From assembly GCF_006345805.1 (NCBI RefSeq), contig NC_042999.1, positions 170,190,001 to 170,254,000 on the forward strand: a stretch of DNA of 64,000 nucleotides, in the 5' to 3' direction. This DNA is from Octopus sinensis. Lineage: Eukaryota. Positions 1 to 37,868 of this stretch are shown here, piece by piece. Numbering within the stretch: the first letter of the stretch is position 1; each line of letters starts with the position of its first letter. The translations under genes were made by a program, and so were the position numbers. The notes under the pieces were generated by a model that ran no database searches, had not been told where the DNA came from, and was given only the letters and a program-made list of their open reading frames with translations.

Positions 1-13
1 CATCTTTAGCAAT

Positions 14-535
14 TTAAAATTGTAAAACCCTGCATCTTAGGTTTTTCTGAAAAGCGAACAAAAGCTGTGAAATAGGAACCTGTGGTGGAGACTGCATATT
101 GGCAACGGAGACAATAAGGGGAGACTTTTTTATAAAAGCTTCAATTTTAAATATGGAAGTAATTGAAGTGATAAAAAAAAATAAAATAAAAAGGAAAAAT
201 ATATTTAGCAAGCAAGAAATAAATAGCTAGAACTATGCTAAAACTGGCAAAAATTATTTTTTCTTTAAGCGTCAAGTTTAATTTTAAAATACATTTTGCT
301 TCAGCGCATTAAATCAAAAAGATTAATTTTCCCCAATAAATATTTCTTTGGGCTGTTCCTTGTGATTTCTTTGTTGAACTGACTTTGAAGAATAGCCTTG
401 GGTGCCAGTTCAAATTTCTATATTGATTATTTACCAAATTGAATAAAAGAAAAAAACAAAATGTGAAAATTGCTCCGTAACAAGAACCTAAGAAAGACAA
501 GATTATCCTCAGCAAGTATTGTCAAGAAACTCAAC
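14..535 (-). pseudogene. C-terminal MEI1-like relics
   Basis: Acceptor tcagttgcag at 536-537; LLRSNFHILFFSFIQFGK*SI*KFELAPKAILQ vs [29 protein letters not shown]. The 14-165 segment matches only weakly. Confidence 0.5.
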
Positions 536-616
536 CTGCAACTGAAATCAATTGATTAGTAAAATAGAAAATAACAGCTTAACTGAAAATAATAGGATTT
601 TTATTTGCTGTTCAAT

Positions 617-1107
617 TTAATGACAATAGAGATGCACTGATATGCCATCTAGCGAACATCTTTTCTCTAATCAGATATTCTCCAAAAGAAAACTACCAAA
701 TTTGACAGTTCCTGTCCATTATAACCAATCTGTTTTCTCTAAATAAATCAAACAGTTCAGTAATGTAGCAAAGAAAAATACCAATTTTATTAACAGCAAT
801 ACAAACCGATCAGTTTGGTGAAGAGGAAGACCAATAGGTATTGAACTTTCTAAAATCAATAAGCATTTCTTGATGGATTAATACGCAAACAATCAACAGA
901 GAGAAGAATGCCACACCATACTTAATATTCCTTCCTACATTCAGTTTCAAAACAAAATGGAAATTAAAAATAAGCTACCATAGGATTATCAATATATAAC
1001 TTTTTTACAGAAGTACTAACTGTTGTTGCTGTTATAGTTATAGGCAGATGTACACAACATGATAAACAAGTGAATAGTGACATCTAAGAAAGGTTTCAGA
1101 CCAGGAA
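617..1107 (-). pseudogene. two MEI1-like exon relics (1021-1107; 617-849)
   Basis: The 87-nt phase 1-1 exon joins the next in frame. The second reads ...[33 protein letters not shown] vs [25 protein letters not shown], with two in-frame stops. Confidence 0.65.
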
Positions 1108-1584
1108 CTTCAATATGAACAAAACCATGTAATTAAAGACAACTAGGAGTGGAAAGAATACATGCTATATATATATATAGTGAGGAAAATATTGAAATGA
1201 AAATAATTAAATCAGTTACTTGTTTTAATTAGTATATTTACTAGCTCAGCAGTTGATTTCAAAGAACAACAAATCTGGAAAATTACTATCCAATGTGGTG
1301 CATATCCAGTTCTAATTTTTCCGATGAAACTTAGCTGGCTCATGTTAATACCACCAATTTTTAATTACCACTGAAGACATAGATTATAAGCCCTAACTGA
1401 GAGAACAGCTCCTAGATTGACCAACAAAAGCTAAAGTGAGGCAGAGGTAGTAAGAACCAACAAGTAATTACTGCAATGACCAAACACTAAGCTCACGGTC
1501 CTTAAAATAATTTAATGTAACTACAGATATTTGGAATTCGAACACTAACAAAACTTGAATCATGTCTCTATAATGGAAGCTTAC

Positions 1585-1973
1585 ATTGAATATGGCTCTG
1601 ATAGGAACTGGTCACTGAAATCACTGCTGTATAGCAGAAGATGGTAGCTTACCCTAAAATTAGTTTTATGCAGAGAACTGACATTGACCCATAACTGTAT
1701 GATGGTGCTTACATTTAGTCCGCTTACACAAATAAATAGATCCCTATTGGTTAGCCAACAATATTTAATTGTCTTAAAATCATGCCCAATGTTTATTTCT
1801 CTCACGCTAATACCAGACATTACAATACACAGGTTCATAAACAATGAAACAAACCTGACAGTAAGTTACCTGATATTTCCCTTTCCTATATACATTACAG
1901 AATGCAGAGAGTCACTACACTTACAAAGAGAAAAACATTCAAATACAATCAACACATTCATCAAAGCCAACAC
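1585..1973 (-). pseudogene. MEI1-like exon relic(s)
   Basis: Cluster of minus-strand GTAAG donors. ORF 1581-1844 contains SLHKTNFRVSYHLLLYSSDFSDQFL vs human [27 protein letters not shown]. Exact exon boundaries unresolved. Confidence 0.55.
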
Positions 1974-2629
1974 CTGGACAATCTGATCCAAGAATTAGTG
2001 TTTTTGGGCTTTGTTTCTAGTCATTTTTACACTTTTTTAGTAGAGTACATCTTAGAAGTCTATATCAGACTAAGACCAATTCCATCACACACTGATTAAA
2101 ACCTGCTACTAATAACCACATAATGCAGTATTACCTGCTCACAGATGACTAAACTAGCCCCTACAGAGCTTGTCTAACAAGGACAGGGTGAGGGTATCTA
2201 ATAGGATGAGAAGCTAAATCAGTTAAAAGCGAATGAGCTCCTTGAGAGTCAATTGTACCCGTGCCCTAGTGCCAATGGTATAACCAAGCCAATACAAATA
2301 TATTACATTAATACTAACGTAATTGTAGCATTAAGAAAGCCCAAGATTGAAAGAGGAGAGGGGAAAAATTGGTAAAACTAAAAATTCAATGGTGGAAGAA
2401 AAGCTATGGGAAAATGGAAATATAAAAAGTGACTTTCTACTACTTGGTTGTATGAACTTGTTGAGAGCATCAGCCAAAATTGCTTAATAATTTCTCTGTC
2501 ATCTTCTGAATTAGGAACTACAAGTTATGTCCTAAATCTCAAGCCAATCTAAATCACACTCCAATATATATATGTATATACATATATATATGTATATATG
2601 TATATACATATATATATAGGGAGAATTGA

Positions 2630-2809
2630 TGAAAAAAAAACAAGATGAAGACAGGTGGTGTAGAAAACAAACAGATGTATTAGTATAACGCTCGGGAATT
2701 GAAAAAGTCTTTTACACTTCAAGCCTATGCTCTTCCACAGAAAGAAACAAGAAGAGAAAAAAAATGTGTGTAGTAGCTACCGATCTATCATGGCGACTGC
2801 CGGACAGAA

Positions 2810-2810
<1 letters not shown>
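2630..2810 (-). mobile_element. solo PLE 3' tail, degenerate hammerhead-like motif
   Basis: Minus strand tctttctgtggaagagcataggcttgaagtgtaaaagac...cccgagcgttatactaatac, homologous to the 10.4 and 11.4 kb copies. Confidence 0.65.
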
Positions 2811-2847
<37 letters not shown>

Positions 2848-2862
2848 GTGATACTTATCACT

Positions 2863-3032
2863 ACAATGTTGAAGAATTGTTTGATCAGCAATCCTTGTGC
2901 TGTACATATTTGCAATGCCAGAGTAACAACAGAACCAAGTGTATGTTTCTTTCCCTATTGCAGAAACAACTACAGCAGTTATAAATATCATCGGTAATAA
3001 TCATAGAGACATGGCTAGCTTTCTTTGTCTTT
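2863..3032 (-). pseudogene. MEI1-like exon relic
   Basis: Acceptor ctcgtaacag; LAMSL*LLPMIFITAVVVS resembles [21 protein letters not shown]; TGA at 3001-3003. Confidence 0.4.
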
Positions 3033-6000
3033 CTGTTACGAGGAGAAAGGAATGGGGGTGGGAATACAAATAAAATGAAATTCAATAGAAAATTTGAAAA
3101 CACTAATAAGGAATTCTTACTGCTATTTAACAACCCTAATTAATTAAAATTATTTTTTTTCCTTATTGTAGAACATTTATATTATAACTACTAGGATTAA
3201 TTTAATTTTTGATTGAATTTCTCATGATAATTAAAACCTAAGAGCTAAATGGCTGGGATAGAAATCAACAGAGAGGGAAACCTTAAATTAGGGGATGGGA
3301 AGCTTTTTTTGAACAAGGGACAAACTGCAAGTGCTTAAGCACTTATAGGGACACAACACAGAGAAAAATAAATCTTTAATTTTACACATTCAATAGTTAA
3401 TACGGCTAATATCAAATTACTGTTATGCTGTTAAGGCGTAAGCTAATATTTTTGTATAGGTTTTTAAGAGAACTCTAACAACAGGGAGGGGAGGGTGTTC
3501 TCAAATTTCAATGTGAGTGAAATTTTAACTGTGGGCAAAGGGTTCCTCACCCATGCTTTGAGTGCTGAACCTGCTAGAAACAGCAGATGACACCCAACCA
3601 TTAATATATATATATATATACTAAAAGCAGGATGGTCAAGACTGAAACATTCAATCATATGTCTGTTTGAGTTACCAGAATTAACTTTGGGCTGAAAACA
3701 AAACCCCTAGAGAGGTTATTGTAATAACCCAGGGTTAAAAAAAAAAACACCTCCACCACCCCATTTCATTGTTCCAAAAATCATAACAAGATAGACTGTT
3801 TTTAAAGACAAATCAAATTCAACACTTTTATGTCGGCTTTCTTCACACTGCCAAAGACATAACATTTAAAGTTGGATGTTTTCTACGGCTGGATGCCCTT
3901 CCTGACATCAACCCTTACAGCTGGATCTTTTGTTTTGGAAACAAATAATGTCACTGACAAAGTAGTGCCTTTGAGAAGATATGCAGATACTAATACACAC
4001 ACACACACACAATACTCAGAGATATCTGTATTGGCTTCCATCAACAAGATTTCACTCACAAGGCATTGGTCCGCTTGAGGCTATAATAGCAGACACTTCA
4101 CCGGTACCAGGTGCCACAAGTAGACTTTTTAAATCTATGATAATATAACTCTCACATATTTGTTTAAAATTAAAAAGTAAAGGAGTTCTTTAAAATTTAT
4201 ATAGATTCCACTTTCTACTGAACTAGCAAATCTACCCATCTACGATGGAGGCATAAAATGAGGGTGGGGAGTTATAACAGCAGTATGTATTGAGAAATGT
4301 GTAAATGGACTTTGATAGATTGCTGGGTGATGTCTTCAAGAAATCACATTGTTGTTGGTGATACAGCAGTCTATGACGTCTTTGTGACTAAGTGCCATGT
4401 GATATGATTCTCTCCGAAACTGAAATAGGCTCCCAGCCTCTGCATCATGAATCGTTATGTGGACCACTCGTAATGAAAACCAGACACTATATACTGACAC
4501 ACACTTTTTCCAATTTATTTTCGCTATTAACCATCCTCATAACCCCCTTTGTATCTATAATGGCACCACGAACTATACAATGAAAATCCATAGTTACTCA
4601 TGGTTGGTGTATTTTTAATAAAAATGTGATGGTCGTTTATCAATTCAAAAACCGATATCCACAAAATAATCATACCTTCTGATTTTTTAATGCTGAAAAC
4701 CTTCCTGGCGACCATCTTTGTAATCCCCCAAAATATCTTAACCATTGGTCCAGTCAAGAAGAGGGAACAAAGAGATAAACATAACACCCATTATAGTAAG
4801 ATAGTAAATCTACCCATCTACAATGGGAAATAAAGGGATAGTATCGCAAATCTAAACCCCTGTAAATTCATGAACTATACAGGGGTGGGGAGGGGAATCC
4901 AGAATTAATCGTAGTTGCCAGAATTTTAGCAAAAAAAAATCAAAGTTGATTTATTAATACAAAACTCAATATCCACTAAATAATCATACTTTTTTACATT
5001 TTTTTCACTAAAAACTTTCCTGATTACCTCCTTTGTAATGCCAAAAAAACATCATGACCATTGGATTAGCCATTTGACCGTGAAGAGGAAACATAGATGG
5101 ACATAATGCTCATTATAGTAAGATGACCAACAGTTTTAAGTTTTTGATAGAATTTTTTAATGGTTTAGTTAGGGGAAGAAGGGCACAACCAGGACCTTCC
5201 TCAAAGCAACTGTGGAGCAAAAGGAAGTTATCACTATCCTTAGATTAGTCCTAACTACTTGCAATACAAAGACACCATTGAAGACCCCCAGCACACAAGT
5301 GAGATATTTTTGTTAAAGTAATACTAATTACTTTGTTGATTAATCCTTTTTTCTGACTACATTTCTAATAAAACTTACAATCTATACTCGTTTATATCCA
5401 TTTATACATTTCAGTCATGTGACTGTGGTCATGCTGGAGCATCACCATGAATATTTAAATTAGTTTTGTAAAATAATATTATTTTGGACAGATTTAGTAA
5501 AATCAGGGTCTTTTCTTTCTCATTATTAATCTGGAACTTATAACTTAAAAATTTTCAATAAAATTATGACAGGTTTCACCAAATTTAAGTATAAACATTT
5601 TAAAATGGTATGTTTTATATCATAGAACTAATGAAAGTCTAAGTCAGGTTGGTATTAAATGAGTTAATCATAATAAGCTTTCAGGTATTTAAAATGTATT
5701 TTGTAATCTAGTGTATAGCACCTGGGTATCTAAACCCAACAAATATTTAACCGTCATTTACCCTCTATGACATAAACTATAAATTTCAGATCAACCCAGT
5801 TAAATATAACAAACTTCACGAGTTGAAGGAACAGCAGCAAAACAACATGGAGTGAAAAAAAAAAGAAAAAAATTAACATAGCAATAGGAAATATTCAAAA
5901 AGAAAAATCTGCAGCTCATTTCATGTTCTACTCAGTGAAACCTAGATTTTGTGCATATGGAGAAAAGCCAGCAATCAAATAAAGGCAAGTTGAAGCATAA

Positions 6001-6090
6001 TGACCAAACGCGAGACGGGAATGAAGTTCAAGTGATGCAAGGCTTTACAAAGGGTGGGCGTTTTTCTTTTGAGAACAGTTTGGAAGTTAC

Positions 6091-6306
6091 CTCGTGTAGG
6101 GTTAGGACAATAGTCATGAAGAATGAGATCAATATTCTTCTCACAGCCCTCTCTCCTCATCTCACACTCACTATTGTAAACTCGGCCATCTGAAGCACAG
6201 ACTTCGCCATCCGAAGACAGGCTCTCATGACATTCGATGTCACACTCACAGACATTATTTTTACAAGTTGCACCATATGAACAGTTACTATTGCTCGTAC
6301 ACTGAT
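6091..6306 (-). CDS. intact internal exon encoding one follistatin (FOLN + Kazal) module; agrin/tomoregulin-like secreted or membrane protein
   Basis: ttctatttcag acceptor, GTAACT donor, 216 nt, phase 1-1, no stops. DQCTSNSNCSYGATCKNNVCECDIECHESLSSDGEVCASDGRVYNSECEMRREGCEKNIDLILHDYCPNPTR has all 10 FS-domain cysteines and the VCxSDGxxYxSEC Kazal motif. Confidence 0.9.
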
Positions 6307-7167
6307 CTGAAATAGAAATAGATCAATCACAAGTTAAGGTTAGACATTAGAGACTGAGTTACATATACTGTGTGGTTTGTGAGAGACTTTGTTAATGATA
6401 TAAAAAAGAGAGTACACAGAGAGCAGAATTAAGAAACCCGAGAGATAGAAGAAAAAATAAATAAAAATAAAACCTATGTACAAAAGATGATGTGATCCCA
6501 TTAAAAAAACTGGGAAAAAAAGCAGGTATAAGACTAATAAAGAAAAAGAATGTTAACGAAAGAGAAAATAAAATATAGGTTGAAGACGAATGAAAATAGA
6601 TTACACAAATGAGGGAGACTATTTTAATAAAGGCTGCGCATTGTCTAGATATTAAAAAATTATAAAGGGAAATAACTGGAAACAACTGGGTAAAAGTTAG
6701 TGGTTTGTAATAAAGTCTGTTAAGAAATGTGTTCCCTTAAAAAAATAAATAAAAATATCTTCTTCTACTCAATAAAAAAAAGTTTACAAAACTCTGCAAC
6801 CATCACACAATAAAAAGAAAAACAACCTGAAATTGAGCAATGCATATTAACTTCAACATCTGAAACACAAAACTAATAAGCATATTTGATTTTTAATTGA
6901 TAGTAGAAAAAAGAACACAAAAGCACAAAAATAAAATAAACAAATTTGGTTGTTTACACTAAAAATTATTAAGATGTTTTAAAAATATAATGCAAAAATA
7001 AAAAACAAAAATCAATACTTTGTTGTTATGCTTTTTTAAAAAAAGCCTGTTTTGTTAAAAATGATAGAAAATAAAAGGAAAAGAATAAAACTGGATATAA
7101 GATAGAGTTAGAATTATTGGATTTACATTTCCAGAAGAACTTCGGTAAGAGAAATGCCTAAAAAATT

Positions 7168-7549
7168 TAATTAGGCAACAAACACATCTTAGTTTGCAGA
7201 TCAAGATCATTTATTTCTCCTGGCAACCCTCTAAGATAGATTTTTATAAAGTGACTATAATATACTTGTTTGTGTCTGAAATAGACACAAGTAAAAAATT
7301 TGGAGAGCAAAGAAGGACAACTGATTTCATTAACCGCAATATGTTACTGGAAACTAGTGTCTTAAAATATGTTTTCATGGCTGGTAACCTTAAATATTAT
7401 ATACATGTACTTAATGATTCTCTCATCACTACTTCAACAGGTACAGTAGATTCTTTCTGCTTCACTGAATAATACTTAAACATGACCAGAATTTTCTCCC
7501 AGATTTGAGAGTCATTAAGCCAGAGCTTCAATGTGATGAAATATAACGC
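7168..7549 (-). pseudogene. two MEI1-like exon relics (7335-7549 and about 7168-7275) separated by a 59-nt intron
   Basis: [87 protein letters not shown] vs human [27 protein letters not shown]...PPLVVFKASIYLLAIC...[26 protein letters not shown]. Phase-2 GT/AG junction is consistent. Confidence 0.7.
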
Positions 7550-7740
7550 CTAATGTAGCACTATTTTGAAATTTACAGAATTATATATATATCTGGCACT
7601 CCATCAGTTACAACAACGAGGGTTCCAGTTGATCCAATCAACAGAACAGCCTGCTTGTGAAATTAACATGGGTCCCCGCAAACTGAGGTATTACTGTATA
7701 CACACCACACACACACACACATACATCATACATACATACA

Positions 7741-7776
<36 letters not shown>

Positions 7777-7828
7777 TATGTATATATACATATGTATATG
7801 TACATACTTATATCTAAATGTATATCTG

Positions 7829-8150
7829 TATATGCATCTGTTAGGCACAGGACATCACGAAATGTGTATAACAAAAAAATACGAAGTACAAGTACATGGA
7901 ATATGAACTATTTTTTCAAACAACAAAAGACACAAACGGAAAACAAGACAAACAATTGTTGTTAAATGCTCGAAATACGAGACTAGAAAAACAGCCAACG
8001 ACTGATGAAGGGTCATTCTTTATGTTGTTTGTCTTCTTTTCTATTTGTGTTTCGTTCTCCCCAAAAATAGTTCATATTCCATGTACTCGTACTTTGTATT
8101 TTTTTGTTATACATGTTTTGTGATGTCCTGTGCCCACATATGCATATATA
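7829..8150. repeat. about 320-bp foldback / MITE-like element
   Basis: Arms 7829-7915 and 8063-8150 are closely matching reverse complements (e.g. gtacatggaatatgaactattttt / aaaaatagttcatattccatgtac); weaker pairing continues inward. Confidence 0.8.
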
Positions 8151-9929
8151 TATTATTTATGTTATTATATGACTGAATGCCACGCATTCTCTTCCAAAAC
8201 CCTGGCCGCCCCATCGTCTCCGCCTGTAACTGCCCCACGGAGCTCATCTCTAAATACCTCGACCGTGTCCTTGCCCCCCTAGTGGCATCTCTTCCCTCCC
8301 ACATCCACGATACCAACCATGCTCTCCGGCTTTTCAACTCTTTCTCCTTTCCTCCCGGCTCCTCCAAAATCCTTTTTACTATGGACATCTAAAGCCTCTA
8401 TACTGTTATCCCTCACCACGAAGGACTGCAGGCCCTTCGACACTTTCTTGACCTCCGCTCCAACCCTGTACCTGACACCTCCACACTCATTCGTCTGGCC
8501 GAACTTGTCCTTACTTTGAACTGCTTCTCGATCGCGGGCGAGTTCTACCATCAGGTCTCGGGAGTGGCCATGGGAACGCGAATGGGCCCCAACTATGCGA
8601 ACCTGTTCGTTGGCTATGTTGAGGCCCAAATATTCTCTAATTTCACTGGTCCCACTCCTGAACTATATGGTCGTTACATTGACGACATTATCGGTGCCAC
8701 CTCACTCTCCCGTGAACATCTAGATTCCTTCCTCTCTTTCGTCCAATCTTTCCATCCAGCCCTCCACTTCACTTCCACTATCTCCAACACCTCTGTCTCC
8801 TTCCTCGACATTTCGGCTAGCATTCTTCACTCCACTCTTACCACCTCCATTCACTACAAACACAGACTCACACTCATACCTCAACTTCTCTTCCTCCCAC
8901 CCAGAACACACCAAGCTTTCCATCCCCTATTCCCAATTCCTCCGTCTACGTAGGCTCTGTAGTGACGGCCATGACTTTGAGACTCAGTCTCAACGTATGG
9001 CTCACCACTTCACCCTACGTGGATGCCCCCTCACCACTATCCACACCGCCCATGCCAGAGCATGGTCCGTGGACCGTGTATCTGCTCTCTCTCCCCGAAC
9101 CCGCCCTGTAGTCTCCCGCCTCCATTTTCCCTCACTTACCACCCCACGACCCTACCTCTCCAACGCACCATTCTTCGAGCTTTCCGTCATCTCCAGTCCG
9201 ACCCGTCCACTTCACACCTCTTCCCTAACTGACCCCTCCCCTCAAATGAGCCCACAACCTTCGAGACCTTTTGGTCCATAGCTCCTTCCCTGACCCTACC
9301 TCCCAACCCGGCTCGTTCCCCTGCTCCCGCCCACGTTGCCGCACTTGCCCTTACCTCTCCAACACCATCCTCCTCACTAGCACCCATCATCGACCCTATC
9401 CCATCATCCACTCCTTCACCTGCACCTCCAGCAATATTATCTATTGCGTCTCTTGCTCTCTCTGCCATTCCTTGTACATCGGACAAACGGGACGCCGCTT
9501 GGCTGACCGGTTCGCGGAACACCTTCGTGACATCCACCTTGCGAACGACACACCGGTCTCTCGCCATTTCCGCTCCACCGGTCACTCCTTGCAACACCTA
9601 TCTGTGTTCGGTTTGTCCTTACACAGAGGCCATCCGGATTCCCGTTTGCGCCGTGAACAGGAATTAATCTTCTCTCTTCGCTCTTATACGCCATTTGGTC
9701 TCAACTCTCCCCCCTCCTCACCTACCTTTCCCCCCGACCCCTACTTCTTCAGTCCTTCATCCTTTCACCCCTACTCCCCTTCCCTTCTTCCCTCTTTCTC
9801 CATCCCTCTGCTCCCTCACTCCCCTTCTCTCTCCTCCTCCCCCTCCTCTTCTCCCCCTCCCCCTCTTCTCCTCTCTCCACACTACACCACACGACTTTAC
9901 ACATCACATCATATATGATGTGCCATACT

Positions 9930-10260
9930 AATACATACACCAACTAATACATACTAATACATACTAATACATACACCAACCCTATACATACACACGTCCA
10001 GACCTCTCATACGCACTAATACTCTCTCATACACACACACACACACCCTTATACATACTAATACGTACTAATACATACTAATACATACACTAACCCTATA
10101 CATACACACGTCCAGACCTCTCATACGCACTAATACTCTCTCATACACACACACACCCTTATACATACTAATACATACACCAACCCTATACATACACACG
10201 TCCAGACCTCTCATATGCACTAATACTCTCTCATACACACACACACACACACACCCTTAT
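9930..10260 (+). repeat. minisatellite, three units of about 90-110 bp
   Basis: Repeated accctatacatacacacgtccagacctctcatacgcactaatactctctcatacacacac at about 9980, 10092 and 10183. Confidence 0.85.
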
Positions 10261-10422
10261 GTTGGAGCTGGTCACTCAACCCTATTATCTCCCCTAATTT
10301 CGCTCTCGCGTCTCATGTTTGATCTTTGACTTCTGGCCGAAATCAGATCGCCATGTTGGTTCGTTAGTTACTGCACGCATTTTTTTTCTCTCCTTCTTTC
10401 TGTGTTTTTCTCTCTCTGTGTA

Positions 10423-10460
10423 TCTTTCTGTTGAAGAGCGTAGGCTCGAAACGTTAAAGA
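10423..10460 (+). ncRNA. minimal type-I hammerhead-ribozyme-like motif (variant core) in PLE 3' tail
   Basis: TCTTT-CTGTTGA-A-GAGC(GTAG)GCTC-GAAA-CGTT-AAAGA: stem I, stem II, GAAA and palindromic ACGT are present; core differs from CUGAnGA at A6. Confidence 0.5.
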
Positions 10461-10557
10461 CTTGTTTTATTTATATTTCCTGAGCGTCATACTAATACAA
10501 TTGTTTGTTTGTTTTCCACTTGCCTTCGTCTTTTGTCTATTTTCATAAAGCTTCCCG

Positions 10558-10622
<65 letters not shown>

Positions 10623-10625
<3 letters not shown>

Positions 10626-10850
10626 TTTACTGCCCACAAGGGGCTAAACACAGATGGGGACAAACAAGGACAGATAAAGGGATTAAGTCGATTACATCAA
10701 CCCCAGTGCGAAACTGGTACTTTATTTATCGACCCTGGAAGGATGAAAGGTAAAGCCGACCTCGGCGGAATTTGAACTCAGAACATAACGACAGCCGGAT
10801 TACCGCTAAGCATTTCGCCCGGTGCTAACGTTTCTGCCATCTCGCCTCAT
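10623..10850 (-). mobile_element. tRNA-derived SINE family 1 (other copies 15705-15935 +, tandem 18505-18915 -, 48140-48280 -)
   Basis: Shared consensus ggcagaaacgttagc (A-box-like) ... gagttcaaattccgccgaggtcgactttgcctttcatcc (B-box) ... agccccttgtgggcagtaaagaa. Confidence 0.85.
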
Positions 10851-10999
10851 TCATTCATTCATACATACATACATACACACAAACACACATACATACATAT
10901 ATATACATCCTGTAAAGTCAGTGAGAGCACACCATACTTTAGGAAAGCATGTTGTCCAGTGCTTATTTTTCCGCACATTTTCACCCCCAGGAAACTAAC

Positions 11000-11108
11000 A
11001 ATTAATTCCATAGACAGGAACTTTTTTCAAACATTACCCAAACAAGTGAATCAATAGTTAATAAAATGCCTGGCATATTATTAACAAAAAGAAAATATAA
11101 GTATGTAT
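11000..11108 (-). pseudogene. possible additional MEI1-like exon relic
   Basis: Good acceptor (gtgttttacag) and donor (GTTAGT); hydrophobic YIFFLLIICQAF only weakly resembles YCILLLFYLAYI. Confidence 0.3.
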
Positions 11109-11404
11109 CTGTAAAACACCAATTCAAAGTGCAGACAAATCAATTACTTAAAATACAAATTGCAGGTCAGTCATGATCAAGCAGATTTAAGATCAAAAGG
11201 ATTTCAATCAGGATCATCCAATCTCTTGTCTATTTAGGAGTCTCTAGGAATACATGTTTCAATGTGTCCTTCCTTCTTTCAAGGTTGTAGGATGCGATTT
11301 GAAGGAGATTTGGTTACTATTTCTAGCAAGCCAAATGACCACATAAAAGCTCTCCCAGTGATTTTGACAAATATCTGTCATCTCATCTGGTAAATAAAAG
11401 TGAA

Positions 11405-11561
11405 ATGAAGTAACCACTTTTCTGTTTTCTGTGTCCCTTTCTGTAGAAGAGCGTAGGCTTGAAACGTAAAAGACTTTTTCTATTCCTGAGCGTTATGCTA
11501 ATACATCTGTTTGTTTTGTACATCACCTGTCTTCGTCTTTTGTTGTTTTTTTGTAAACTCT

Positions 11562-11565
<4 letters not shown>
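11405..11565 (+). mobile_element. solo PLE 3' tail with hammerhead-like motif (11437-11473)
   Basis: CTTT-CTGTAGA-A-GAGC(GTAG)GCTT-GAAACGTA-AAAG; same family as 10,340-10,557; ends in (TA)n. Confidence 0.7.
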
Positions 11566-11625
<60 letters not shown>

Positions 11626-11795
11626 TCATCATCATCATCAATGCACACTTACATGGTTATAGTATAATTTTTAATGTATTGACCGGTTTCGCAATCGCTA
11701 TTCATGATACAATGTTTAATTTATATGAAAATATATTTTTTCTAAAGAAGAAAATGGGTCCATGTTGTTTATAATGAGATTCACGAGTGAGTGAA

Positions 11796-11851
<56 letters not shown>

Positions 11852-11897
11852 TATTGATTACTCATCAGTTTGTGCTTCAAGTTGTATCATTTCCTAC

Positions 11898-12206
11898 TTT
11901 TTTATGTGCGGCAAAGAAATAAACAAAAGCCATTTCCAAAATCTTGGCATAACAAATGAGGCTGGGTAATAATTTGTAAGAGAATTACTGAAACAGTTTG
12001 AAAGAAAGTACAATGAAACTATATTTGGAAAGGATTTCCTATCAACAAAATACAAACATTTTTAATCAGATTTGATTTTTAAAAGTATTTAAAATAGAAT
12101 TTTTTCTCCTATAGAAATTTTTTTCCACGATAACTGCAGTGAATTTGTCTTTAGAAGTTAAAATATGTCACAAACATATCTTAAATCTCCTAAAGTTCAC
12201 TTATGC
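11898..12206 (-). pseudogene. MEI1-like exon relic
   Basis: One frame: KDKF...F*ILLKIKSD*KC...NIVSLYFLSNCFSNSL...WLLFISLPHI vs human KEKF...FIRLTLELKARFC...NQVCSNFLYYMCLNLL...ELLQHGLPQI. In-frame stops; donor GTAGGA. Confidence 0.65.
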
Positions 12207-14255
12207 CTAAACACTGCTTGGCACTGATACAGCTGAATATATATATATATATATAATGCCATACAGTGGGATTGAACCCAGAATCAAGTGGTTGTGAAGC
12301 AAGTGCAAAAATGGCATTGTGGTTAAGAAGCTCACTTTGTAGCCATGTGGTTTTGGGTTCAGTCCCATTGTACAGTACTTTGGGCTAAACTCTTTAAGGC
12401 GATGCCCCAGCATCTATTATAGCCCTGAGTTGACTAATGCCTTTAGAGTGAATTTGGTAAAGGAAGCTTGTTGTATGTCTGTGGGTGTCTTTGTGATGTT
12501 TTCATCCCCGACCACCACAAGGCAACAAGTGTTCATTTGTTTAGCAGTTTATCAATCAGTACCAGTCTCCATGTGGACCCCTTTTTTTCTTTTTCTAGCA
12601 CCCTGCCCCAATCAACTATCTCACAGGGTTGCTAAAAGCAGCAGCAGAAGAGGAGGCGGTGGTAGCAACAACAGATGCTGGACCCTTGAGGGATGATTGA
12701 TACTATACTGACCACAGAGGGATGTAAAGTAGGTAGGTAGGTTTAGTTTGGTAAGTAGACAGATACCTCTTTTAAAAAGCAGTTTATGTTGAAGAATGTT
12801 CAAACTGACCTGACTAGGAGTTGAAAACAACTGATACTGAACTACACACACAGCTCCAGTTGTGTTTAAGAATAATCCTTTTTACTATAGGCACAAGGCC
12901 TGAAATTTTGGGGGAGGGGGCTAGTCGATTATGTCGAACCTAGTGCTTGACTGATACTTTTTTCAGTGACCCCAAAAGAATGAAAGGCAAAGTCAATCTC
13001 GGCAGAATTTGAACTCAGAACATGATGATGGATGAAATGTTGTTGAGCCTTTCGCCCAGCTCAGTGCTGTTGCGTTTAAGAACAATGAGTATAGCTTTAG
13101 TGTTTGTGTAGTAAACTACAAAATTATTACATTCTCTTGACTTCCTGTAATTCAGATTTCCTCATGGTCCCAGCAGACAAAATGGGAAAAGTGTTGCCCA
13201 AGAGGATGGCAAGAGAGATGTGTTGGAACAGCCAATCTGACTCATGGGCTCACACTTATGGATAGTCATCTCTGCCCCAATAGCGTAGAGCAGGGATACG
13301 GTCCCCTCCCCGGAAGATGAGAATGCTAGAGGTGTCCGTTGTCACAAGCTCAACCATAAACCTGCCAGGGATCTTCAGTGAACTGCTGATGTATATCTTA
13401 ATGACCTTGGTGGGGGTAGAATGTCAAGTTAACCTTATTGAGATTTGAACTCAGAATGTAAAGACATGTAACTATATACTGCAAGGCATTTGGTTTGGTA
13501 ATTCTGCCATTCACTGCATTCTTCAATGCAGTAAAAGTAGCAATAAAAGCAACAAGACTAAATATAAGATATAAAGAGGGGAAAGAGTTGAAAAAAGATT
13601 GTTGTGACTATGGTTTTAAAACTCCTAAATATGTTTATTCAAAACTGTAGACACAAGTGGCTGAGGGAACAATGGATAAGAAAGAAAAAGAAGGAGAGAA
13701 AAAAAAGACTAATTTCTAAATGGCATAACAAATAAATGTATATCAATTAATCAGCTAGGGAAAAATAACAGAGCTATTAGGGTGCAGGTTTTGATAAGCA
13801 AAGCAGGGGCTGGTACTTCTAAGTAGCTTTCCATTGTGATGTCTTATCAGTGGAGAAAAAACACAAGCAGAACAACCAAATTAAGCAGAAAAATAGTTAG
13901 CTTTGTGCCATTAGAAATCACTACATAAAAAAAAAAAGATCCTTATTGTACAGAGACAGAGCAGAGTGCAAGAGTTGAACAAACTTTGGAAATAAATAAA
14001 TGAATAAATAAAAATATTTCATGAAGGAGAAAAACAATAGTCTGTAAGCTATTGAGCAGTTTAAGAAGCTAACTAGACTAGTTGGTGACCATGATATGAA
14101 TTCAAATCATACCTTGCACACAAACTACATTGCTTTATAATGTATCATGTTTATTATACTAAGTTAAAATGCAACACACAAGGATGATTGTGTTTACAAG
14201 ATATTTTGAATAAGAAAACAGCAGACATTATTAATCAGTGTAATTAAGTAGTTAC

Positions 14256-14380
14256 TTGTTGTACAGATATAAATGGTCTCAGCAAGAGTCCATTGCTATC
14301 TCTGTGTAATGTTGGAACACCCATGTCCTGACAGGACCAAATTAGGTAAACAAAGCCACCTGTTACTGTATGATGCCACC
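14256..14380 (-). pseudogene. MEI1-like exon relic
   Basis: Acceptor ttaattttcag, donor GTAACT. SNRWLCLPNLVL vs ACDSLCIPMVMR; TAG at 14296-14298. Confidence 0.5.
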
Positions 14381-14478
14381 CTGAAAATTAACAAAGGAAC
14401 AGATTGTGTGAGGAAACCTTATTCATTCATTTACTTCAGTCACTACATTATGAGGTTTGGTGTTCAGGATGGTGACAC

Positions 14479-14540
<62 letters not shown>

Positions 14541-14541
14541 T
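14479..14541 (+). repeat. (GAT)n trinucleotide microsatellite
   Basis: About 20 perfect GAT units. Confidence 0.95.
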
Positions 14542-16274
14542 TAATGATTTGTATCTGAGATAAAAACATCCTAGAACCACAGATATGAAAGTCTTAAGAG
14601 TAAATTTTCAAATTACAAATTTTAGAAATATTACTGAATAATCTTAACAATCATAACTGTTTGTTAATTTCATCTTTTATTCATTTCAGTCGTTATACTG
14701 CGACTATGCCCGAGCACTGCCTTGAAGGGTTTCATTGAACAAATCAGCCGTAGTAATTGCATTTTTTAAGCCTGGTACTTCATCTGTTGCTATCATCTAA
14801 ATTGCAATGTTATGGGGACATAAATAAACCAACACTGGTTGTCAGGTGGTGGTAAGACAAAGAAACATACATGCCCCCAGTTTCATTTTTTTTTTTAATA
14901 TCTAGATAGAAAGTTGCACATTATAAATAGATGCTATTTATGAACATTGTCAACATAATTTTTATGCCTGACCAAACAAAACACCAGATGGTGGATTCTA
15001 AAATGTTTTTTTTTAATTTCTGAAAATTTAAAATACTATGTTTGAAATTATTAAGATTCTGATTAAAATGTTTTTTGTTTTAATTAAAAATAATTGTCAA
15101 GCACTGAATCTCTGATGTTCAAATCTAAAGACCATTAAAAACAAAAATGCATGAAAAAAGTCTGAAATTATTTTGTTTTTCTCCCCAAAAAACAACATTT
15201 AAATGATATTTTGTTTTGCTGTAGCAATATGACTATGTATATTACTGTAGAAACTCGAGAGGGAAAAAGAGCATAAACTTAAATAAGTGTACCGTCATTA
15301 TCAAAATCCAACTGATTTTCTAGAGAAAACCCCAAAAAAACCTGATCATGTGATTTCCACAAGTTGACTTTGCAGCAGCTGCACTTTTACATCAGTGAAG
15401 TTCATGAGTTAGATTCAAATGTACTTTCTTGTTTCATTTAGGATGCACGAATATTTTCAATGTACTTTATACAGTAAATGTAATAAATCTCACTAAACAT
15501 TTCCTTTCCTCGTGTATCATACCTATATACTAAAGAAAAGTTAATGTCTGTTGTAGACAGGTTTGTCTGTTGAGAAGTTTGCTTAGCAACAATGTGATCT
15601 TGGGTTGTTCCACCACGTGTCATCTTAGGCAAATGTCTTCTACATTAGCCTCCGCTGACCAAAGCCTTGTCAGTGAATTTGGTGGATGGAAACTGAAACT
15701 ATAAGGTGGCAAGCTGGCAGAAATGTTAGCACGCCGGGCGAAATACGTAGCTGTATTTCATCTGCTGTTATGTTCTGAGTTCAAATTCCGCCGAGGTCGA
15801 CTTTGCCTTTCATCCTTTCGGGTTGGATTAAATAAGTACCAGTTACGTACTGGGGTCGATGTAATCGACTTAATCCCTTTGTCTTTCCTTGTTTGCCCCC
15901 TCTATGTTTAGCCCCTTGTGGGCAATAAAGAAATAGTAAACTGAAAGCAGCCCATTGTGCATGCATGTGTGTGCGACTGTGTTGCGTTGTAGTTGTTCCC
16001 TGCCACCATTTGACAACTGATGTTGCTTTATATATATATATATATATATATCCCCATAACTCAGTGACTCGAAAGAGACCAACAGAATAAGACTTGGTCA
16101 ATCAGTTCTAGTAAGAACTTCAAGGCAGTACCCCAGTATGACCACAGTCCAATAACTGAAATGAATAAAAGATAAAAAATCCTTAAATCCTTAAAAATGT
16201 TTTAGCCCGAAGGCCGCGGCCATGCTGGGGCACCACCGCTGAGAACTTATTTTTTTTATCCGGGATTTCAGTGC

Positions 16275-16494
16275 TCATAATCAAGGGTACTCTTTTACTT
16301 GTTTCAGTCATGTGACTGTGGCCATGCTGGAGCACTGCTTTTAGTCGAGCAGATCCACCCCAGGACTTATTCTTTGTAAGCCTAGTACTTATTCTATCGG
16401 TCTCTTTTGCCGAATTGCTAAGTTACGGGGACGTAAACACACCAGCATTGGTTGTCAAGCAATGTTGGGGGGACAAACACAGAAACACACACAC

Positions 16495-16525
<31 letters not shown>

Positions 16526-16685
16526 GATGGGCTTCTTTCAGTTTCTGTCTACCAAATCCACTCACAAGGCTTTGGTTGACCCGAGGCTATAGTAGAAGAC
16601 ACTTGCCCAAGGTGCCACGCAGTGTGACTGAACCCAGAACCATGTGGTTCATAAGTAAGCTACTTACCACACAGCCGCTCCTACA
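16275..16685 (-). mobile_element. tRNA-derived SINE family 2 (other copies 27755-28135 -, 52255-52625 +, 52628-52870 -, 55610-55960 -)
   Basis: Head ggttcagtcccactgcgtggcaccttgggcaagtgtcttctac, internal microsatellite, tail ccagcatggccacagtc...gactgaaacaagtaaaag. Confidence 0.85.
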
Positions 16686-17252
16686 TTAATAATTATTGTA
16701 TGTAGTACTGAATATTATAGATACTCTGGCTACCAGGTTTCACACTTTGGGCAATACACTGTGCCACAACTGATATCATTATGAACCCTTTCAAATCAGA
16801 CAGGGTTTCTGAAGAGAGGCAAGCAAAATGCAAAAGTTCTGCATAAATTTATCGACATAATCAGAACTAGTGTTCTTTAGTTGTGGCTAAATATGTAGCT
16901 ATGACAGAACATTGACATGAAGAATAGAATTTCTTTTGATATGGGGAATGTCAGAATTAAACATCAAGGTGGAATTTTTTCCTTGCTCAGCATAATTAAG
17001 GCATTTTGCAACCACCTCTAGAAAGAAACTAATTGAAGGATGTTGACGAACATGATGGTCTAAAGGAGATAAGTTTATTTTTATGATGAGCCAGCAGTGG
17101 AGCTATAATGAAGGAACTGGTAAAAGACCATCAAAAGCAGATGGAAGACATGCATCCCGGAAAACATGAGAGATGATAGTAAATAATCTAAGACCTAAAA
17201 AGTTAGTCATTGCTGAACAAACTAGATTCATGTCAAGAATCTTTAGAGTCAG

Positions 17253-17820
17253 TTATGAAATTTTGGCCCCCATCTTCTTCATAACAGGTTTCAATACTGT
17301 GAATTTGATAAACTTGAAGGTGATTAAATTATTGAAGATTGATGGCTCCAAATGACTTGTTAAGGGCATGCACCTTGAATCAAATATGTTGGAATAACTG
17401 CATCTAGAAAATATGCAACTCAATGCAGTTGTGAACTCCATGCAACAACAGGAAATGATATTGCATAATAACAGTTTATATTTTGCATGAAGTTGAATCA
17501 AGAGTTTCTGATACTCGCAGCCTAAAATGTTTACTGTTATTTCAGCACTATCAGTAATCATTTCATCTTTTTCCAACAAAGGATTCTGCCTAAAAAAATC
17601 AGATTTTTCTTCCACATGGCAAAATAATCTATTTCACTCTGTGAACTTTTTGTACTTATATGTTGATGCAATCCATCACAAATTTTCTCAGATTCTACTG
17701 TTAAACTTTTACTTCAGTTGTCAGCTCAACTTATGCACCAGAAAGCACAAAGCTAGAGAGCAATACTTCAGAAGATCCAGCCATCAATCATTTATAAATA
17801 TTTCCTTAAGCTTCCTACAT
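17253..17820 (-). pseudogene. MEI1-like exon relic (includes ORF 17253-17615)
   Basis: L*LCAFWCIS vs LQVASAHCIT (TAG where Gln expected); ICDGLHQHISTKS vs IPEFLFEHLSSSS; VEEKSDFF vs VEEPLFF; EMITDS...KLLIQLHAK vs EAVVRS...KQGLLLFAE. At least two frame changes are needed. Confidence 0.75.
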
Positions 17821-17949
17821 CTAGAGTTGCACAATTTTTAGTAAATATCCATCTCTCAATAAATCTTTTGTGTGTTAACTTTCCTCTTATGTCATTTATT
17901 GCCATGGTATTTTTGTTTTCTTTTAACAACAAAACCAAACAAAACAAAC

Positions 17950-18238
17950 CGTTTCTAATTGCTGTTCTGCCATTCCACCATCAGAAATATGAAAGCCTGT
18001 CAATATCATGTGACCAAGCTTTCACTGCACCAGTTGTTATTAATGTAACTAACATAATATATTCTATTCTGCAGGAAGCTGTTACTGCAAGTAAATATAT
18101 ATTTATGGTTTGTTTCTGTTTCAAGTATCTTACAACTAATTACAGTTTTGCTTTACAGTCTCAGAACCATATTGAAAGCTTCACCTTTAAGGTATAGCTA
18201 TTACTTTGCAGATGTTACTTGTAAAACAAAAACGTGCA
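17950..18238 (-). pseudogene. MEI1-like exon relic
   Basis: Acceptor caattgcag. [39 protein letters not shown] vs human [42 protein letters not shown]; flanked by stops. Confidence 0.65.
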
Positions 18239-19139
18239 CTGCAATTGAAATCTAAGTAGTGTAGGTAACTGAATAATCAGGATTTTGGGCCTAGCAACTG
18301 TAATGATTAGCATCTCAACAGCCACATATTCTACACAATCCTAAATATTACAATGTTTTTTTTTTCAAGAAAACTATGGCAGTAAGTGTAATTAAAGTGT
18401 ACATTTAGAAAATAACAGAAATTCTGCTGTTTGTTACATACAAAATATCTTTTTTATGAGTGAAAAATATCTTGCTTTGGCAAACACCTAAATGTCTAAG
18501 ATATTTCTTTATTGCCCACAAGGGGCTAAACATAGAGGGGACAAACAAGGGCAAACAAAGGGATTAAGTCGATTACATTGACCCCAGTGCGCAACTGGTA
18601 CTTTATTTATTGACTCCGAAAGGATGAAAGGCAAAGTCAACCTTGGTGGAATTTGAACTCAGAACGTAACGATAGACAAAAAACCTATTTCTTTACTACC
18701 GACAAGGAGCTAAACACAGAAGAGACAAACAAGGACAGACAAACGGATTAAGTCGATTACATCGACCCCAGTGAGTAACTGGTACTTTATTTATCGACCC
18801 CGAAAGGATGAAAGGCAAAGTTGACCTTGGCAGAATTTGAACTCAGAACGTAACGGCAGACGAAATACCGCCAAGCATTTCTCCCAGTGTGCTAACATTT
18901 CTGCCAACTTGCTGCCCTTACCTAAATGTCTAAGATAGGCAGTTGTTAATTTTTTTTCCCTTCTTACAATTAGAGATGTCTTTAGAGATGAGGATGTTTC
19001 CATATATTTACATCTACATCCCATTTCAGTTAGAGCTCGCCCTTTTGAAACCTAAGGTAGATGGAAATATCTGTGAATTGTTTTCTCTGAAGATGAAATT
19101 TAAATCAATCATCATGTTTCTCATTAAATATTGTTACTG

Positions 19140-19350
19140 TTATCATCATCATCATCACCATTGTTTAATGTCTGCCTTCCATGCTGGCATGGGTTGGACA
19201 GTTTGACAGGAACCAGCCAGGTAGAAGGCTACTGTGTCTGTTTTGGCATGGTTTTTACAGCTGGATGCCCTTCCAAATGCCAACCCCTTCACAGTGTGGA
19301 GTGGGAGCTTTTATGTGGCACCAGCACTGGCAAGGCCACCAAATAACTTG
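19140..19350 (-). mobile_element. (ATG)n-tailed SINE/LINE-tail family 3 (other copies 20222-20530, 37515-37800, 40325-40580, 55970-56200, 60660-60750)
   Basis: catcatcat-ttaacgtccgctttccatgctggcatgggttggac...ggatgcccttcctaacgccaacc repeated many times. Confidence 0.8.
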
Positions 19351-20842
19351 CAAGGCAACGAATTTTGAGAGGGGTGGGGGCATTGGAGGAGGGGATCTTG
19401 TGTCAAATGATGAAAGGTTAAAGTATGACAGAAACAGGTGTATTGCTATAGAGGAGGGGACAGAGAGAGAGAGAGAGAGAGAGGGAAAGAAAGGCAACTA
19501 GAAAGAGGAGAGAAACAGGTGTGCTGATGTAAAGGAGATGATTGATTACCTGGCCAGAGGAAGAGCTATGTAAATATTGAAGATTGTCGGAAACATCATC
19601 ATTGTTTAATGTCCACATTCCTAAGCTTGCATGGATCAAATGGAATTCATTGAGGCAGATTTTCTACAGCCAGATACCCTTTCTGCCATGTACCTTCACT
19701 TGACTCCAACCAAGTTATTTCCCAGAGATTTGACACTTTTTCATGGAAGATTGGAAATGAATGACACTGCTTATAGGACAGTGATGCTTGTTTACAACTG
19801 CATGTAATCAAAATAAGGAGACATGCGTGCACACACACAAACATAACAGGTTGCTTTTTCAGTTTCCTCACAAGTGTTTGGTTGACCTGGAGCTTTAATA
19901 GAAGACACTTTCCCAAAGTGCCATGCAGTGGGACAGAATCCCAAATCGCTGGCTACGAAGCAAACTCCTTAACCACCCAATCATGTCTTACTGACACTCC
20001 TGAAATCCCACTGATATCTTTTAGTCAGCAAAGTAGTTAACGTTGTCCCTTAGAAATTGTAGTCAAGAGATGGCATAGATTTTATTACTAGACTTGTTTC
20101 CAATTTACATTAAATATTGTGAAAGTATTAGAGTTACAAAGAAGCATGAATAATGTTAGTAAGACATTCAAAGCTATTTGTATAAGATTCTCTTCTGATA
20201 TCTGTCTATAAATATAAACATTTATCATCATCATCATTGTTTAACATCCGCCTTCCATGCTGACATGAGTGGAAACGGTTTGACAAGAGCCTGCACAAGA
20301 CTTCTGTGACTGTTTTGGCAGGATTTTTACAGCTGGATGCCCTTCCTAACACCAACCACTCATCAGAGTGGGCTTAGTGCTTTTTACGTGGCACAAGTAC
20401 AGATGAGGTCAGTTTTGGCAAGGTTTTTACAGTTGGCTGCCCTTTCCGAACACCAACCACTTTACAGTGTGGATTGGGTGCCATTAAGTGGCACCTGCAC
20501 TGACAGGGCCACCGAGTACTTGCAAGACATTAAAAAAACAAAAACTTATAAATATCCTTTGTACTTATAGTAGGCACAAGGCCTGATATTTTTGGTGAGA
20601 GAGCTAGTTGATTACATCAACCCTAATTCTCAACTTGTACTAATTTCATCAACTCCAAAAGTTATTCTCAGAAGAAATTGAACTCAGAACATAAAGACAA
20701 AAAAAATGCCACTAACCATTTTGTCTGGCATGCTAATCCTGCCAGCTCACTCAACTTATATAAACATGAGTGTATGAATGCATGTATATATTTGTGTGCA
20801 TAAATATACATGCATACATACACATCTCTCTCTCTCACTCCC

Positions 20843-20846
<4 letters not shown>

Positions 20847-20916
<70 letters not shown>

Positions 20917-20925
20917 CATATATAT

Positions 20926-20966
<41 letters not shown>

Positions 20967-21005
20967 CATACATATATATATATACATACATACATATATA
21001 TATAT

Positions 21006-21080
<75 letters not shown>
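20847..21080. repeat. (TA)n/(TACA)n compound microsatellite (similar runs at 10559-10622, 11566-11622, 11799-11846, 46215-46360, 57459-57522)
   Basis: Direct reading; source of the YIYIYI ORFs. Confidence 0.95.

Positions 21081-21086
<6 letters not shown>

Positions 21087-33342: not shown

Positions 33343-33373
<31 letters not shown>

Positions 33374-37830: not shown

Positions 37831-37868
<38 letters not shown>

What the first reader, a model, noticed from the sequence alone, without database searches (positions are those of the whole stretch)
6091..6306. Intact follistatin/Kazal exon interleaved on the same strand between dead MEI1 exons
Seen: a perfect 216-nt phase 1-1 exon with all 10 FS cysteines lies between MEI1-like segments at 7168-7275 and 2863-3032, on the same strand, while the surrounding MEI1 exons are decayed. 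Same-strand interleaved genes are rare because of splicing conflict. Inference, three options: (a) a large agrin/tomoregulin-like gene runs through the MEI1 locus; (b) the exon arrived by shuffling or rearrangement and may have caused or followed MEI1 death; (c) a new gene uses the old MEI1 transcription unit.
Basis: partly seen in the sequence, partly recalled or inferred. Interest (0 to 1): 0.75.

Follow-up and report, generated by a model that had tools for sequence, protein, structure and literature searches.

The report
Lone follistatin/Kazal exon, agrin-like
The window holds one intact, splice-ready exon for a follistatin/Kazal protein module that most resembles those of the matrix protein agrin; it sits alone in 64 kb of transposon-rich DNA, and I found no evidence for the dead MEI1 gene said to surround it.

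Summary
It lies on the minus strand at 6306..6091: 216 nt, phase 1-1, 71 full codons and 10 cysteines. It has a CTAAC branch site, a pyrimidine tract, an AG acceptor and a GTAACT donor, and it forms a GC island (43% against 27-36% in the flanks). It passes Pfam Kazal_2 (34.7 bits, cut-off 22.8). Its best solved-structure match is human agrin, followed by follistatin. Its best relatives among 1.84 billion proteins are agrins from many phyla, at no more than 55% identity per domain, and in arthropod agrins it matches the short seventh FS domain best. A predicted model (pLDDT 80) matches only FS/Kazal structures.

It is the only host-protein domain in the window. Everything else recognisable is transposon-derived (Penelope-like, mariner, Tc1-like) or simple repeats. 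No second agrin, Kazal, laminin-EGF or LamG exon is present.

The two "MEI1-like" segments have stop codons, near-background GC, no Pfam hit and no protein homologue at E<=1. The claim of interleaved genes therefore has nothing to rest on.

The most likely reading is one module exon of a large agrin-like gene with very long introns (at least 58 kb upstream). This is ordinary. One small oddity: no close homologue exists in the 15-billion-protein collection, so the lineage or the exon is unannotated.

The parts
6091..6306 (-). Coding exon for one complete follistatin-like (FS) module: an N-terminal four-Cys hairpin plus a six-Cys Kazal part. 216 nt, phase 1-1, 10 Cys, no stop codon.
   Evidence: Sequence and translation. 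Kazal_2 34.7 bits against a cut-off of 22.8. Agrin and follistatin in PDB. All invariant and near-invariant columns of 29 related FS domains are kept. AF2 model with pLDDT 80 matches follistatin, WFIKKN2, FSTL1 and SPARC FS domains. GC 0.43 against 0.27-0.36 in the flanks.
6307..6345 (-). 3' splice signals of the upstream intron: a CTAAC branch-site-like motif 34 nt before the exon, a pyrimidine tract (18 of 25) and the AG at 6308-6307.
   Evidence: Read directly from the sequence. Function is inferred from the general metazoan splice consensus.
6085..6090 (-). 5' splice site of the downstream intron: GAG|GTAACT. It differs from the usual (C/A)AG|GTRAGT consensus at the first exonic position and at intron position +5.
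   Evidence: Read directly from the sequence.
6307..64000 (-). Presumed upstream intron of at least 57.7 kb, with no further FS, laminin-EGF or LamG exon. It is filled with simple repeats and transposon remnants and has a 100-N assembly gap at 49683-49782.
   Evidence: tblastn of the exon and of 150 agrin/Kazal relatives found nothing else. Pfam on 300 stop-free pieces found only transposon domains. N run located.
1..6084 (-). Presumed downstream intron of at least 6 kb, with no recognisable exon.

Best explanation
This is a normal internal coding exon on the minus strand that encodes one follistatin-like module. It most likely belongs to this animal's agrin or agrin-like extracellular-matrix proteoglycan gene. 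The exon would be spliced through its phase-1 borders to neighbouring module exons outside the window, so almost all of the window is intron, filled with transposons and microsatellites. In arthropod agrins the closest counterpart is the short seventh FS domain. Shown here: the exon, its splice signals, its FS/Kazal identity and fold, its solitude in 64 kb, and its closest relatives being agrins. Inferred: that it is transcribed, and that the rest of the gene lies beyond both window ends.
For: The exon anatomy is exact and the splice signals are canonical. It passes Kazal_2 above the gathering score. Human agrin is the best PDB sequence hit at 2.9e-18, with follistatin next. Among 1.84e9 proteins, the top named single-domain matches are agrins or agrin-annotated fragments: mayfly agrin-like (55% over 56 aa), leech agrin, Artemia, tick and spider. 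Of the 150 best representatives, 36 carry the laminin-EGF pair and 24 the LamG region. In 8 of 17 agrins, including all the arthropod ones except barnacle, the best-scoring domain is the short 64-66 aa one, which is seventh in full-length proteins. All 14 invariant or near-invariant columns of the FS alignment are kept, and with a G contributed by the previous exon the split first codon would give the consensus Asp. The model has pLDDT 80 and every top fold match is an FS or Kazal domain. The exon is a GC island. It is not part of any repeat in the window and has no flanking terminal repeats.
Against: No second exon of the gene lies in 64 kb, so the upstream intron would have to exceed 57 kb. 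No protein in a 15-billion-sequence collection shares even three 5-residue words with the exon. Its parent protein is therefore unannotated, or its lineage is unsampled, and transcription is untested. The assignment to the seventh FS domain fails for bivalve, leech, barnacle and deuterostome agrins. Identity to any agrin domain is only 35-55%, so another multi-FS family cannot be excluded. The source organism could not be identified.
Confidence: 0.6

Rival explanations
1. It is an exon of a different FS-module gene rather than agrin. Candidates are tomoregulin/TMEFF, a follistatin-like or SPARC-related protein, or one of the multi-Kazal secreted proteins common in invertebrates.
For: Many of the 499 hits are short multi-Kazal proteins without agrin's other domains. 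One 47.7% match (P0062, 200 aa) is unnamed, and a spider fragment in the same cluster as an 'agrin' entry is labelled tmeff1. Identity to agrin domains is modest, and the domain ordinal is inconsistent outside arthropods.
Against: The best named matches are overwhelmingly agrins, across six or more phyla. No EGF, transmembrane or EF-hand exon lies in the 6 kb downstream. Small FS genes would be expected to be more compact, although that is weak evidence in a genome like this.
Confidence: 0.2
2. It is an orphan exon: a piece of an agrin-like gene left behind or copied by duplication or rearrangement. It is not part of a working transcript and is intact only because it is young.
For: It is the only host exon in 64 kb. 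No annotated or predicted protein anywhere contains it. It has small departures from the FS consensus: one extra residue between Cys1 and Cys2, a Cys9-Cys10 loop two residues shorter, and no Gly before the last Cys.
Against: All 10 cysteines, the other near-invariant residues, the open frame, the branch site, the pyrimidine tract, AG and GT are all intact in 32% GC DNA where stop codons arise easily. The GC island has not decayed towards background. No duplication or transposon boundaries lie around it.
Confidence: 0.15
3. One reading: the exon sits between decayed exons of a MEI1 pseudogene on the same strand, as an interleaved gene, a shuffled-in exon, or a new gene using the old MEI1 transcription unit.
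For: Both named segments follow an AG, and each region has open reading pieces in some frame. My negative homology test depends on shared 5-residue words and would miss a badly decayed pseudogene.
Against: 7168-7275 is followed by no GT donor. GC is at or only slightly above that of their flanks. There is no Pfam hit on the pieces covering them, nor on any other minus-strand piece of 45 aa or more tested. No homologue was found at E<=1.
Confidence: 0.04

Closest known systems
Agrin, follistatin-like domain array (FS1-8 before the laminin-EGF pair, FS9 after). The closest match is the short seventh FS domain of arthropod agrins, e.g. XP_059489125.1 of Neocloeon triangulifer, residues 624-688.
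   Same: It has the same 10-Cys FS framework and the short Cys3-Cys4 hairpin (CKNNVCEC against CKNGKCEC). It shares the VCASDG..Y.SECEM.R..C core, at 55% identity over 56 aa. It is a one-module, one-exon unit with phase 1-1 borders, as is general for extracellular modules; that last point rests on my knowledge of Patthy's class 1-1 modules and was not tested here.
   Different: Only one module is present in 64 kb, and no NtA, laminin-EGF, SEA or LamG exon was seen. The Cys6-Cys7 loop is longer (HESLSSDGEV), the Cys9-Cys10 loop is shorter, and the Gly before Cys10 is missing. Bivalve and deuterostome agrins match best with other domains.
Follistatin FS domains (PDB 2b0u, 2p6a) and the WFIKKN2, FSTL1, FSTL3 and SPARC FS domains.
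   Same: The fold is the same: TM 0.70/0.65 over 72 columns with the WFIKKN2 FS domain, and rmsd 2.0 A over 50 columns with follistatin. The sequence aligns over residues 1-60 with follistatin FS3.
   Different: The sequence scores are much lower than for agrin (6.9e-9 against 2.9e-18). Those proteins are small and have other partner domains, none of which is seen here.
Classical Kazal serine-protease inhibitors (ovomucoid third domain, SPINK1).
   Same: The C-terminal six-Cys part is a Kazal domain, and the fold matches at TM about 0.4-0.5.
   Different: The exon carries the extra N-terminal four-Cys hairpin and the six-residue Cys8-Cys9 spacing seen in the aligned FS-type domains. Inhibitor function was not tested and is not implied.

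Membership tests
Follistatin-like (FS) module = FOLN hairpin + Kazal domain | Ten cysteines in the FS spacing, including C-x6-Y-x3-C and C-x6-C in the Kazal half | tested here: met
   All 10 Cys align with the invariant or near-invariant Cys columns of 29 FS domains. G12, V36, G41 and Y44 are also kept.
Follistatin-like (FS) module = FOLN hairpin + Kazal domain | Kazal profile hit above the curated threshold | tested here: met
   PF07648 Kazal_2: 34.7 bits against a cut-off of 22.8, E=1.9e-8.
Follistatin-like (FS) module = FOLN hairpin + Kazal domain | N-terminal FOLN/EGF-like hairpin recognised by a profile | tested here: inconclusive
   No FOLN family was listed at E<=1 in Pfam. However, residues 1-22 align Cys for Cys with the hairpins of follistatin FS3 and of agrin FS domains.
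Follistatin-like (FS) module = FOLN hairpin + Kazal domain | FS/Kazal fold | tested here: met
   AF2 model with mean pLDDT 80. All of the top 20 or so PDB fold matches are FS or Kazal domains, with best TM 0.70; E-values are weak because the domain is small.
Agrin | Tandem array of FS modules (8 + 1) | tested here: inconclusive
   There is only one FS exon in 64 kb. The rest could lie outside the window if introns exceed 57 kb.
Agrin | Laminin-EGF pair, SEA, EGF and three LamG domains; NtA domain | tested here: inconclusive
   None is present in the window by tblastn with 150 relatives, 24 of which have LamG regions, or by Pfam on 300 stop-free pieces. The window may simply be too short.
Agrin | Closest relatives of the domain are agrin FS domains, with a consistent ordinal | tested here: inconclusive
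   The closest named relatives are agrins. The best domain is the short seventh one in 8 of 17 agrins, and another ordinal in the other 9.
MEI1 gene or pseudogene | Detectable protein similarity to MEI1 in collinear segments | tested here: not met
   A three-frame composite of 2850-3050 and 7150-7300 gave 818 candidates, none at E<=1. No Pfam hit. Caveat: the search is word-seeded, and no genuine MEI1 sequence was available for a direct tblastn.
Same-strand interleaved (nested) genes | Exons of two distinct genes alternating on one strand | tested here: not met
   Only one host exon of any kind is detectable in the window.
Tomoregulin (TMEFF) | Two FS modules followed by an EGF module and a transmembrane segment | tested here: inconclusive
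   No second FS exon and no EGF exon is present in the window. The stretch after the donor is not conserved: the one apparent match was to intron read-through in a metagenome ORF call.

The most novel reading that the evidence does not exclude
The exon belongs to a gene that exists in no annotated proteome: either a lineage-specific FS-module gene, or an extra agrin-like paralogue in an unsampled animal lineage. It would have been assembled by exon shuffling of a phase 1-1 FS module into a very long, transposon-rich transcription unit. The evidence does not exclude this, because no protein among 15 billion shares even three 5-residue words with it and no partner exon is visible.
Probability: 0.1. 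Interest if true: 0.35.

Novelty: new member of a known kind. Interest (0 to 1): 0.15.

Why it matters
It matters little beyond annotation. The exon gives a precise anchor (6306..6091, minus strand, phase 1-1) for building the agrin-like gene model in a genome where it appears to be unannotated. It also illustrates how far apart module exons can lie in a repeat-rich animal genome. The more exciting claim, two genes interleaved on one strand, has no support. If it were confirmed by a real MEI1 alignment and by cDNA, it would be a modestly interesting case of gene nesting after pseudogenisation.

Tried and rejected
- **Close-homologue search:** a word-indexed search with the exon peptide found nothing, so the parent protein could not be fetched.
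- **MEI1 test:** a composite three-frame query of both segments gave no hit at E<=1. I could not obtain a MEI1 sequence by any tool, and I did not type one from memory.
- **Species identification:**
  - Exact look-ups of four window ORFs found no record.
  - The Tc1-like transposase has relatives of at most 62% identity across most of its length, all but one unnamed; the one organism name is a gammaproteobacterial MAG, which does not help.
  - The contigs of two of those relatives carry only sample codes.
  - Rfam and tRNA scans were empty.
- **Read-through past the donor:** I considered whether the exon is really longer, because the open frame runs on to 5978. I rejected this. The only apparent similarity beyond Cys10 was to intron read-through in a prokaryote-style ORF call, and the exon ends five residues after Cys10, where the aligned FS-domain segments also end.
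- **Transposon-captured gene fragment:** rejected, because there are no repeats or terminal repeats around the exon.
- **Bacterial promoter/terminator scan:** irrelevant for this eukaryotic DNA.
- **Literature searches:** searches on agrin exon phases and on cephalopod agrin gave nothing usable.

Full report
**The observation**

Read 5'->3' on that strand, the sequence is ...tctaaccttaacttgtgattgatctatttctatttcag|ATCAGTGTACGA...ACCCTACACGAG|gtaacttcc....

- The exon runs 6306..6091 and is 216 nt long.
- Only one of its three frames is open. That frame starts at the third base and leaves one base at the end, so both borders are phase 1.
- The 71 full codons give QCTSNSNCSYGATCKNNVCECDIECHESLSSDGEVCASDGRVYNSECEMRREGCEKNIDLILHDYCPNPTR, with 10 cysteines.
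- Upstream there is a CTAAC branch-site-like motif 34 nt from the exon, a tract with 18 of 25 pyrimidines, and AG. Downstream is GTAACT.
- The exon is a GC island: 0.43 against 0.27 and 0.32 in the adjacent 1 kb on each side, and 0.36 and 0.29 in the adjacent 300 nt.

**What the exon encodes**

- Pfam gives Kazal_2 at 34.7 bits, above the curated 22.8.
- Against all PDB sequences the best hit is human agrin (8s9p, E=2.9e-18, eight FS domains matched), then follistatin (6.9e-9). The follistatin alignment runs over residues 1-60 and includes the N-terminal hairpin cysteines.
- An exhaustive HMMER search of 1.84 billion representatives gave 499 proteins at E<=1e-3.
- Ranked by single-domain match, the best are a mayfly agrin-like protein (55% over 56 aa, residues 629-682), an unnamed 200-aa protein (48%), leech agrin, spider Kazal fragments filed as agrin or tmeff1, and Artemia and tick agrin-like proteins.
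- Further named hits are agrins of a hemichordate, Trichinella, two bivalves, a barnacle, a spider, amphioxus and a mite.
- Of the 150 best representatives, 36 carry the laminin-EGF pair and 24 the LamG region.
- In an alignment with 29 related domains, the exon keeps every invariant and near-invariant column (nine invariant Cys plus C3, G12, V36, G41, Y44). If the previous exon ends in G, the split first codon gives the consensus Asp. Its differences are one extra residue between Cys1 and Cys2, a longer Cys6-Cys7 loop, a Cys9-Cys10 loop two residues shorter, and no Gly before Cys10.
- An AlphaFold2 model built on that alignment has mean pLDDT 80. Its PDB fold matches are all FS or Kazal domains: follistatin, the WFIKKN2 FS domain (TM 0.70/0.65 over 72 columns), FSTL1, FSTL3, SPARC and ovomucoid.

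The exon therefore encodes one complete FS module.

**Which agrin domain it resembles**

I located all FS domains in 17 agrins with a profile built from the hits and scored each against the exon. In 8 of the 17 the best-scoring domain is the short 64-66 aa one, which is the seventh in full-length proteins. These eight are tick, mayfly, Artemia, spider, mite and three unnamed proteins. In the hemichordate, leech, barnacle, two bivalves, amphioxus and three unnamed proteins, another ordinal scores best. The FS7 assignment is a lead, not a result.

**The surroundings**

The exon is alone in the window.

- tblastn of the exon peptide, and of all 150 relatives, found no other FS, laminin-EGF or LamG segment.
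- I scanned 300 stop-free pieces of 45 aa or more (56 aa or more for the plus strand) against Pfam.
  - The 150 minus-strand pieces from 1 to 53.7 kb gave only Kazal_2 (this exon), a GIY-YIG domain and a weak chance-level hit.
  - The second set, made of plus-strand pieces plus most of the remaining minus-strand pieces (up to about 59.7 kb), gave only transposon-type domains (HTH_48 of Mos1, DDE_3, RVT_1) and weak chance-level hits.
- The window is about 35% GC and rich in microsatellites. It holds a GC-rich Penelope-like remnant at 8.1-9.9 kb, a GIY-YIG piece at 26.2-26.7 kb, a mariner at 29.4-30.4 kb, a Tc1-like element at 53.2-54.2 kb and a 100-N gap at 49683-49782.
- The exon and its flanks are not repeated elsewhere in the window, and no terminal repeats bracket it.

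**The MEI1 claim**

Segment 7168-7275 follows an AG but has no GT after it. The GC of both segments is at or only slightly above that of their flanks. The stop-free pieces covering both segments were in the Pfam scan and gave nothing. A composite of all three minus-strand frames of 2850-3050 and 7150-7300 was searched against 5.8 billion protein clusters: 818 candidates shared words with it, and none scored E<=1.

I could not fetch a genuine MEI1 protein with the tools, and I did not write one from memory. A direct tblastn is therefore still missing, and a badly decayed pseudogene could escape a word-seeded search. As it stands, nothing supports MEI1 here, so nothing supports interleaving, a splicing conflict, or re-use of a MEI1 transcription unit.

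**A small oddity**

The word-indexed search with the exon itself found no protein sharing three 5-residue words, and the best single-domain identity anywhere is 55%. The parent protein and any close orthologue are therefore absent from a 15-billion-protein collection. Either the lineage is unsampled or unannotated, or the exon has been missed by annotation.

I could not identify the organism. Exact look-ups of four window ORFs failed. The Tc1-like transposase has relatives of at most 62% identity across most of its length; all but one are unnamed, and that one is a gammaproteobacterial MAG. Two of those relatives traced back only to sample codes. Rfam and tRNA scans were empty. The exon is in fact closer to arthropod than to bivalve agrin domains.

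**Explanation**

- **Most likely (about 0.6):** an ordinary internal exon of a large agrin-like gene on the minus strand. It would be joined through phase-1 borders to module exons more than 57 kb upstream and more than 6 kb downstream, with the window being almost all intron.
- **Rival, about 0.2:** an exon of another multi-FS gene.
- **Rival, about 0.15:** a young orphan exon left by duplication or rearrangement.
- **Rival, about 0.04:**

That FS modules are single phase 1-1 exons, and so shuffle easily, is established knowledge about extracellular modules (Patthy). I recalled it and did not test it here.

**Verdict**

The exon is real, well defined and ordinary: a new member of a known kind. 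The unusual part of the finding, same-strand interleaving with a dead MEI1 gene, is not supported. Interest is low (0.15). The decisive work is to extend the locus, obtain cDNA junctions, and run a direct MEI1 tblastn.

Noticed in passing
window 8100-9950 (+): A GC-rich (51%) Penelope-like retroelement remnant sits in 32% GC DNA. It has a reverse-transcriptase piece (8393-8950) and an ORF with a GIY-YIG-type motif (IIYC...LYIGQTGRRL, 9271-9918; identified by eye, not scanned against Pfam). An 89-nt inverted repeat lies just upstream (7844-7932 / 8046-8134), and a 90/114-nt tandem repeat lies just downstream (9943-10246).
   Followed up: partly
window 26239-26730 (-): A 164-codon open frame carries a GIY-YIG domain (Pfam E=6.9e-7). 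It is probably a second Penelope-like fragment.
   Followed up: partly
window 29448-30415 (+): A Mos1-type mariner transposase split into two frames by one frameshift (HTH_48 E=1e-14).
   Followed up: partly
window 53226-54174 (-): A Tc1-like DDE_3 transposase in two frames. Its best relatives among 5.8 billion protein clusters reach only 62% identity across most of its length, and all but one are unnamed metagenome or Logan ORFs; the one organism name is a gammaproteobacterial MAG. The host lineage therefore looks poorly sampled.
   Followed up: yes
window 49683-49782: A run of exactly 100 N, i.e. a scaffold gap of unknown true size. An exon could be hidden there.
   Followed up: no
window 2564-2762, 10405-10613, 11418-11619: Three copies (78-86% identical) of a roughly 200-nt interspersed repeat, SINE- or MITE-like.
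   Followed up: partly
window 17256-17633 (-): A 126-codon stop-free stretch in AT-rich DNA with no Pfam hit and no exact record in the collection. About one stretch of this length is expected by chance in the window.
   Followed up: partly
P0111 / P0155 (ENA metagenome contigs): These are prokaryote-style ORF calls on what is evidently animal DNA. They hold three or four FS domains in one open frame and then run on into low-complexity, intron-like sequence. They are a reminder that 'metagenome proteins' matching this exon may be read-through artefacts.
   Followed up: partly
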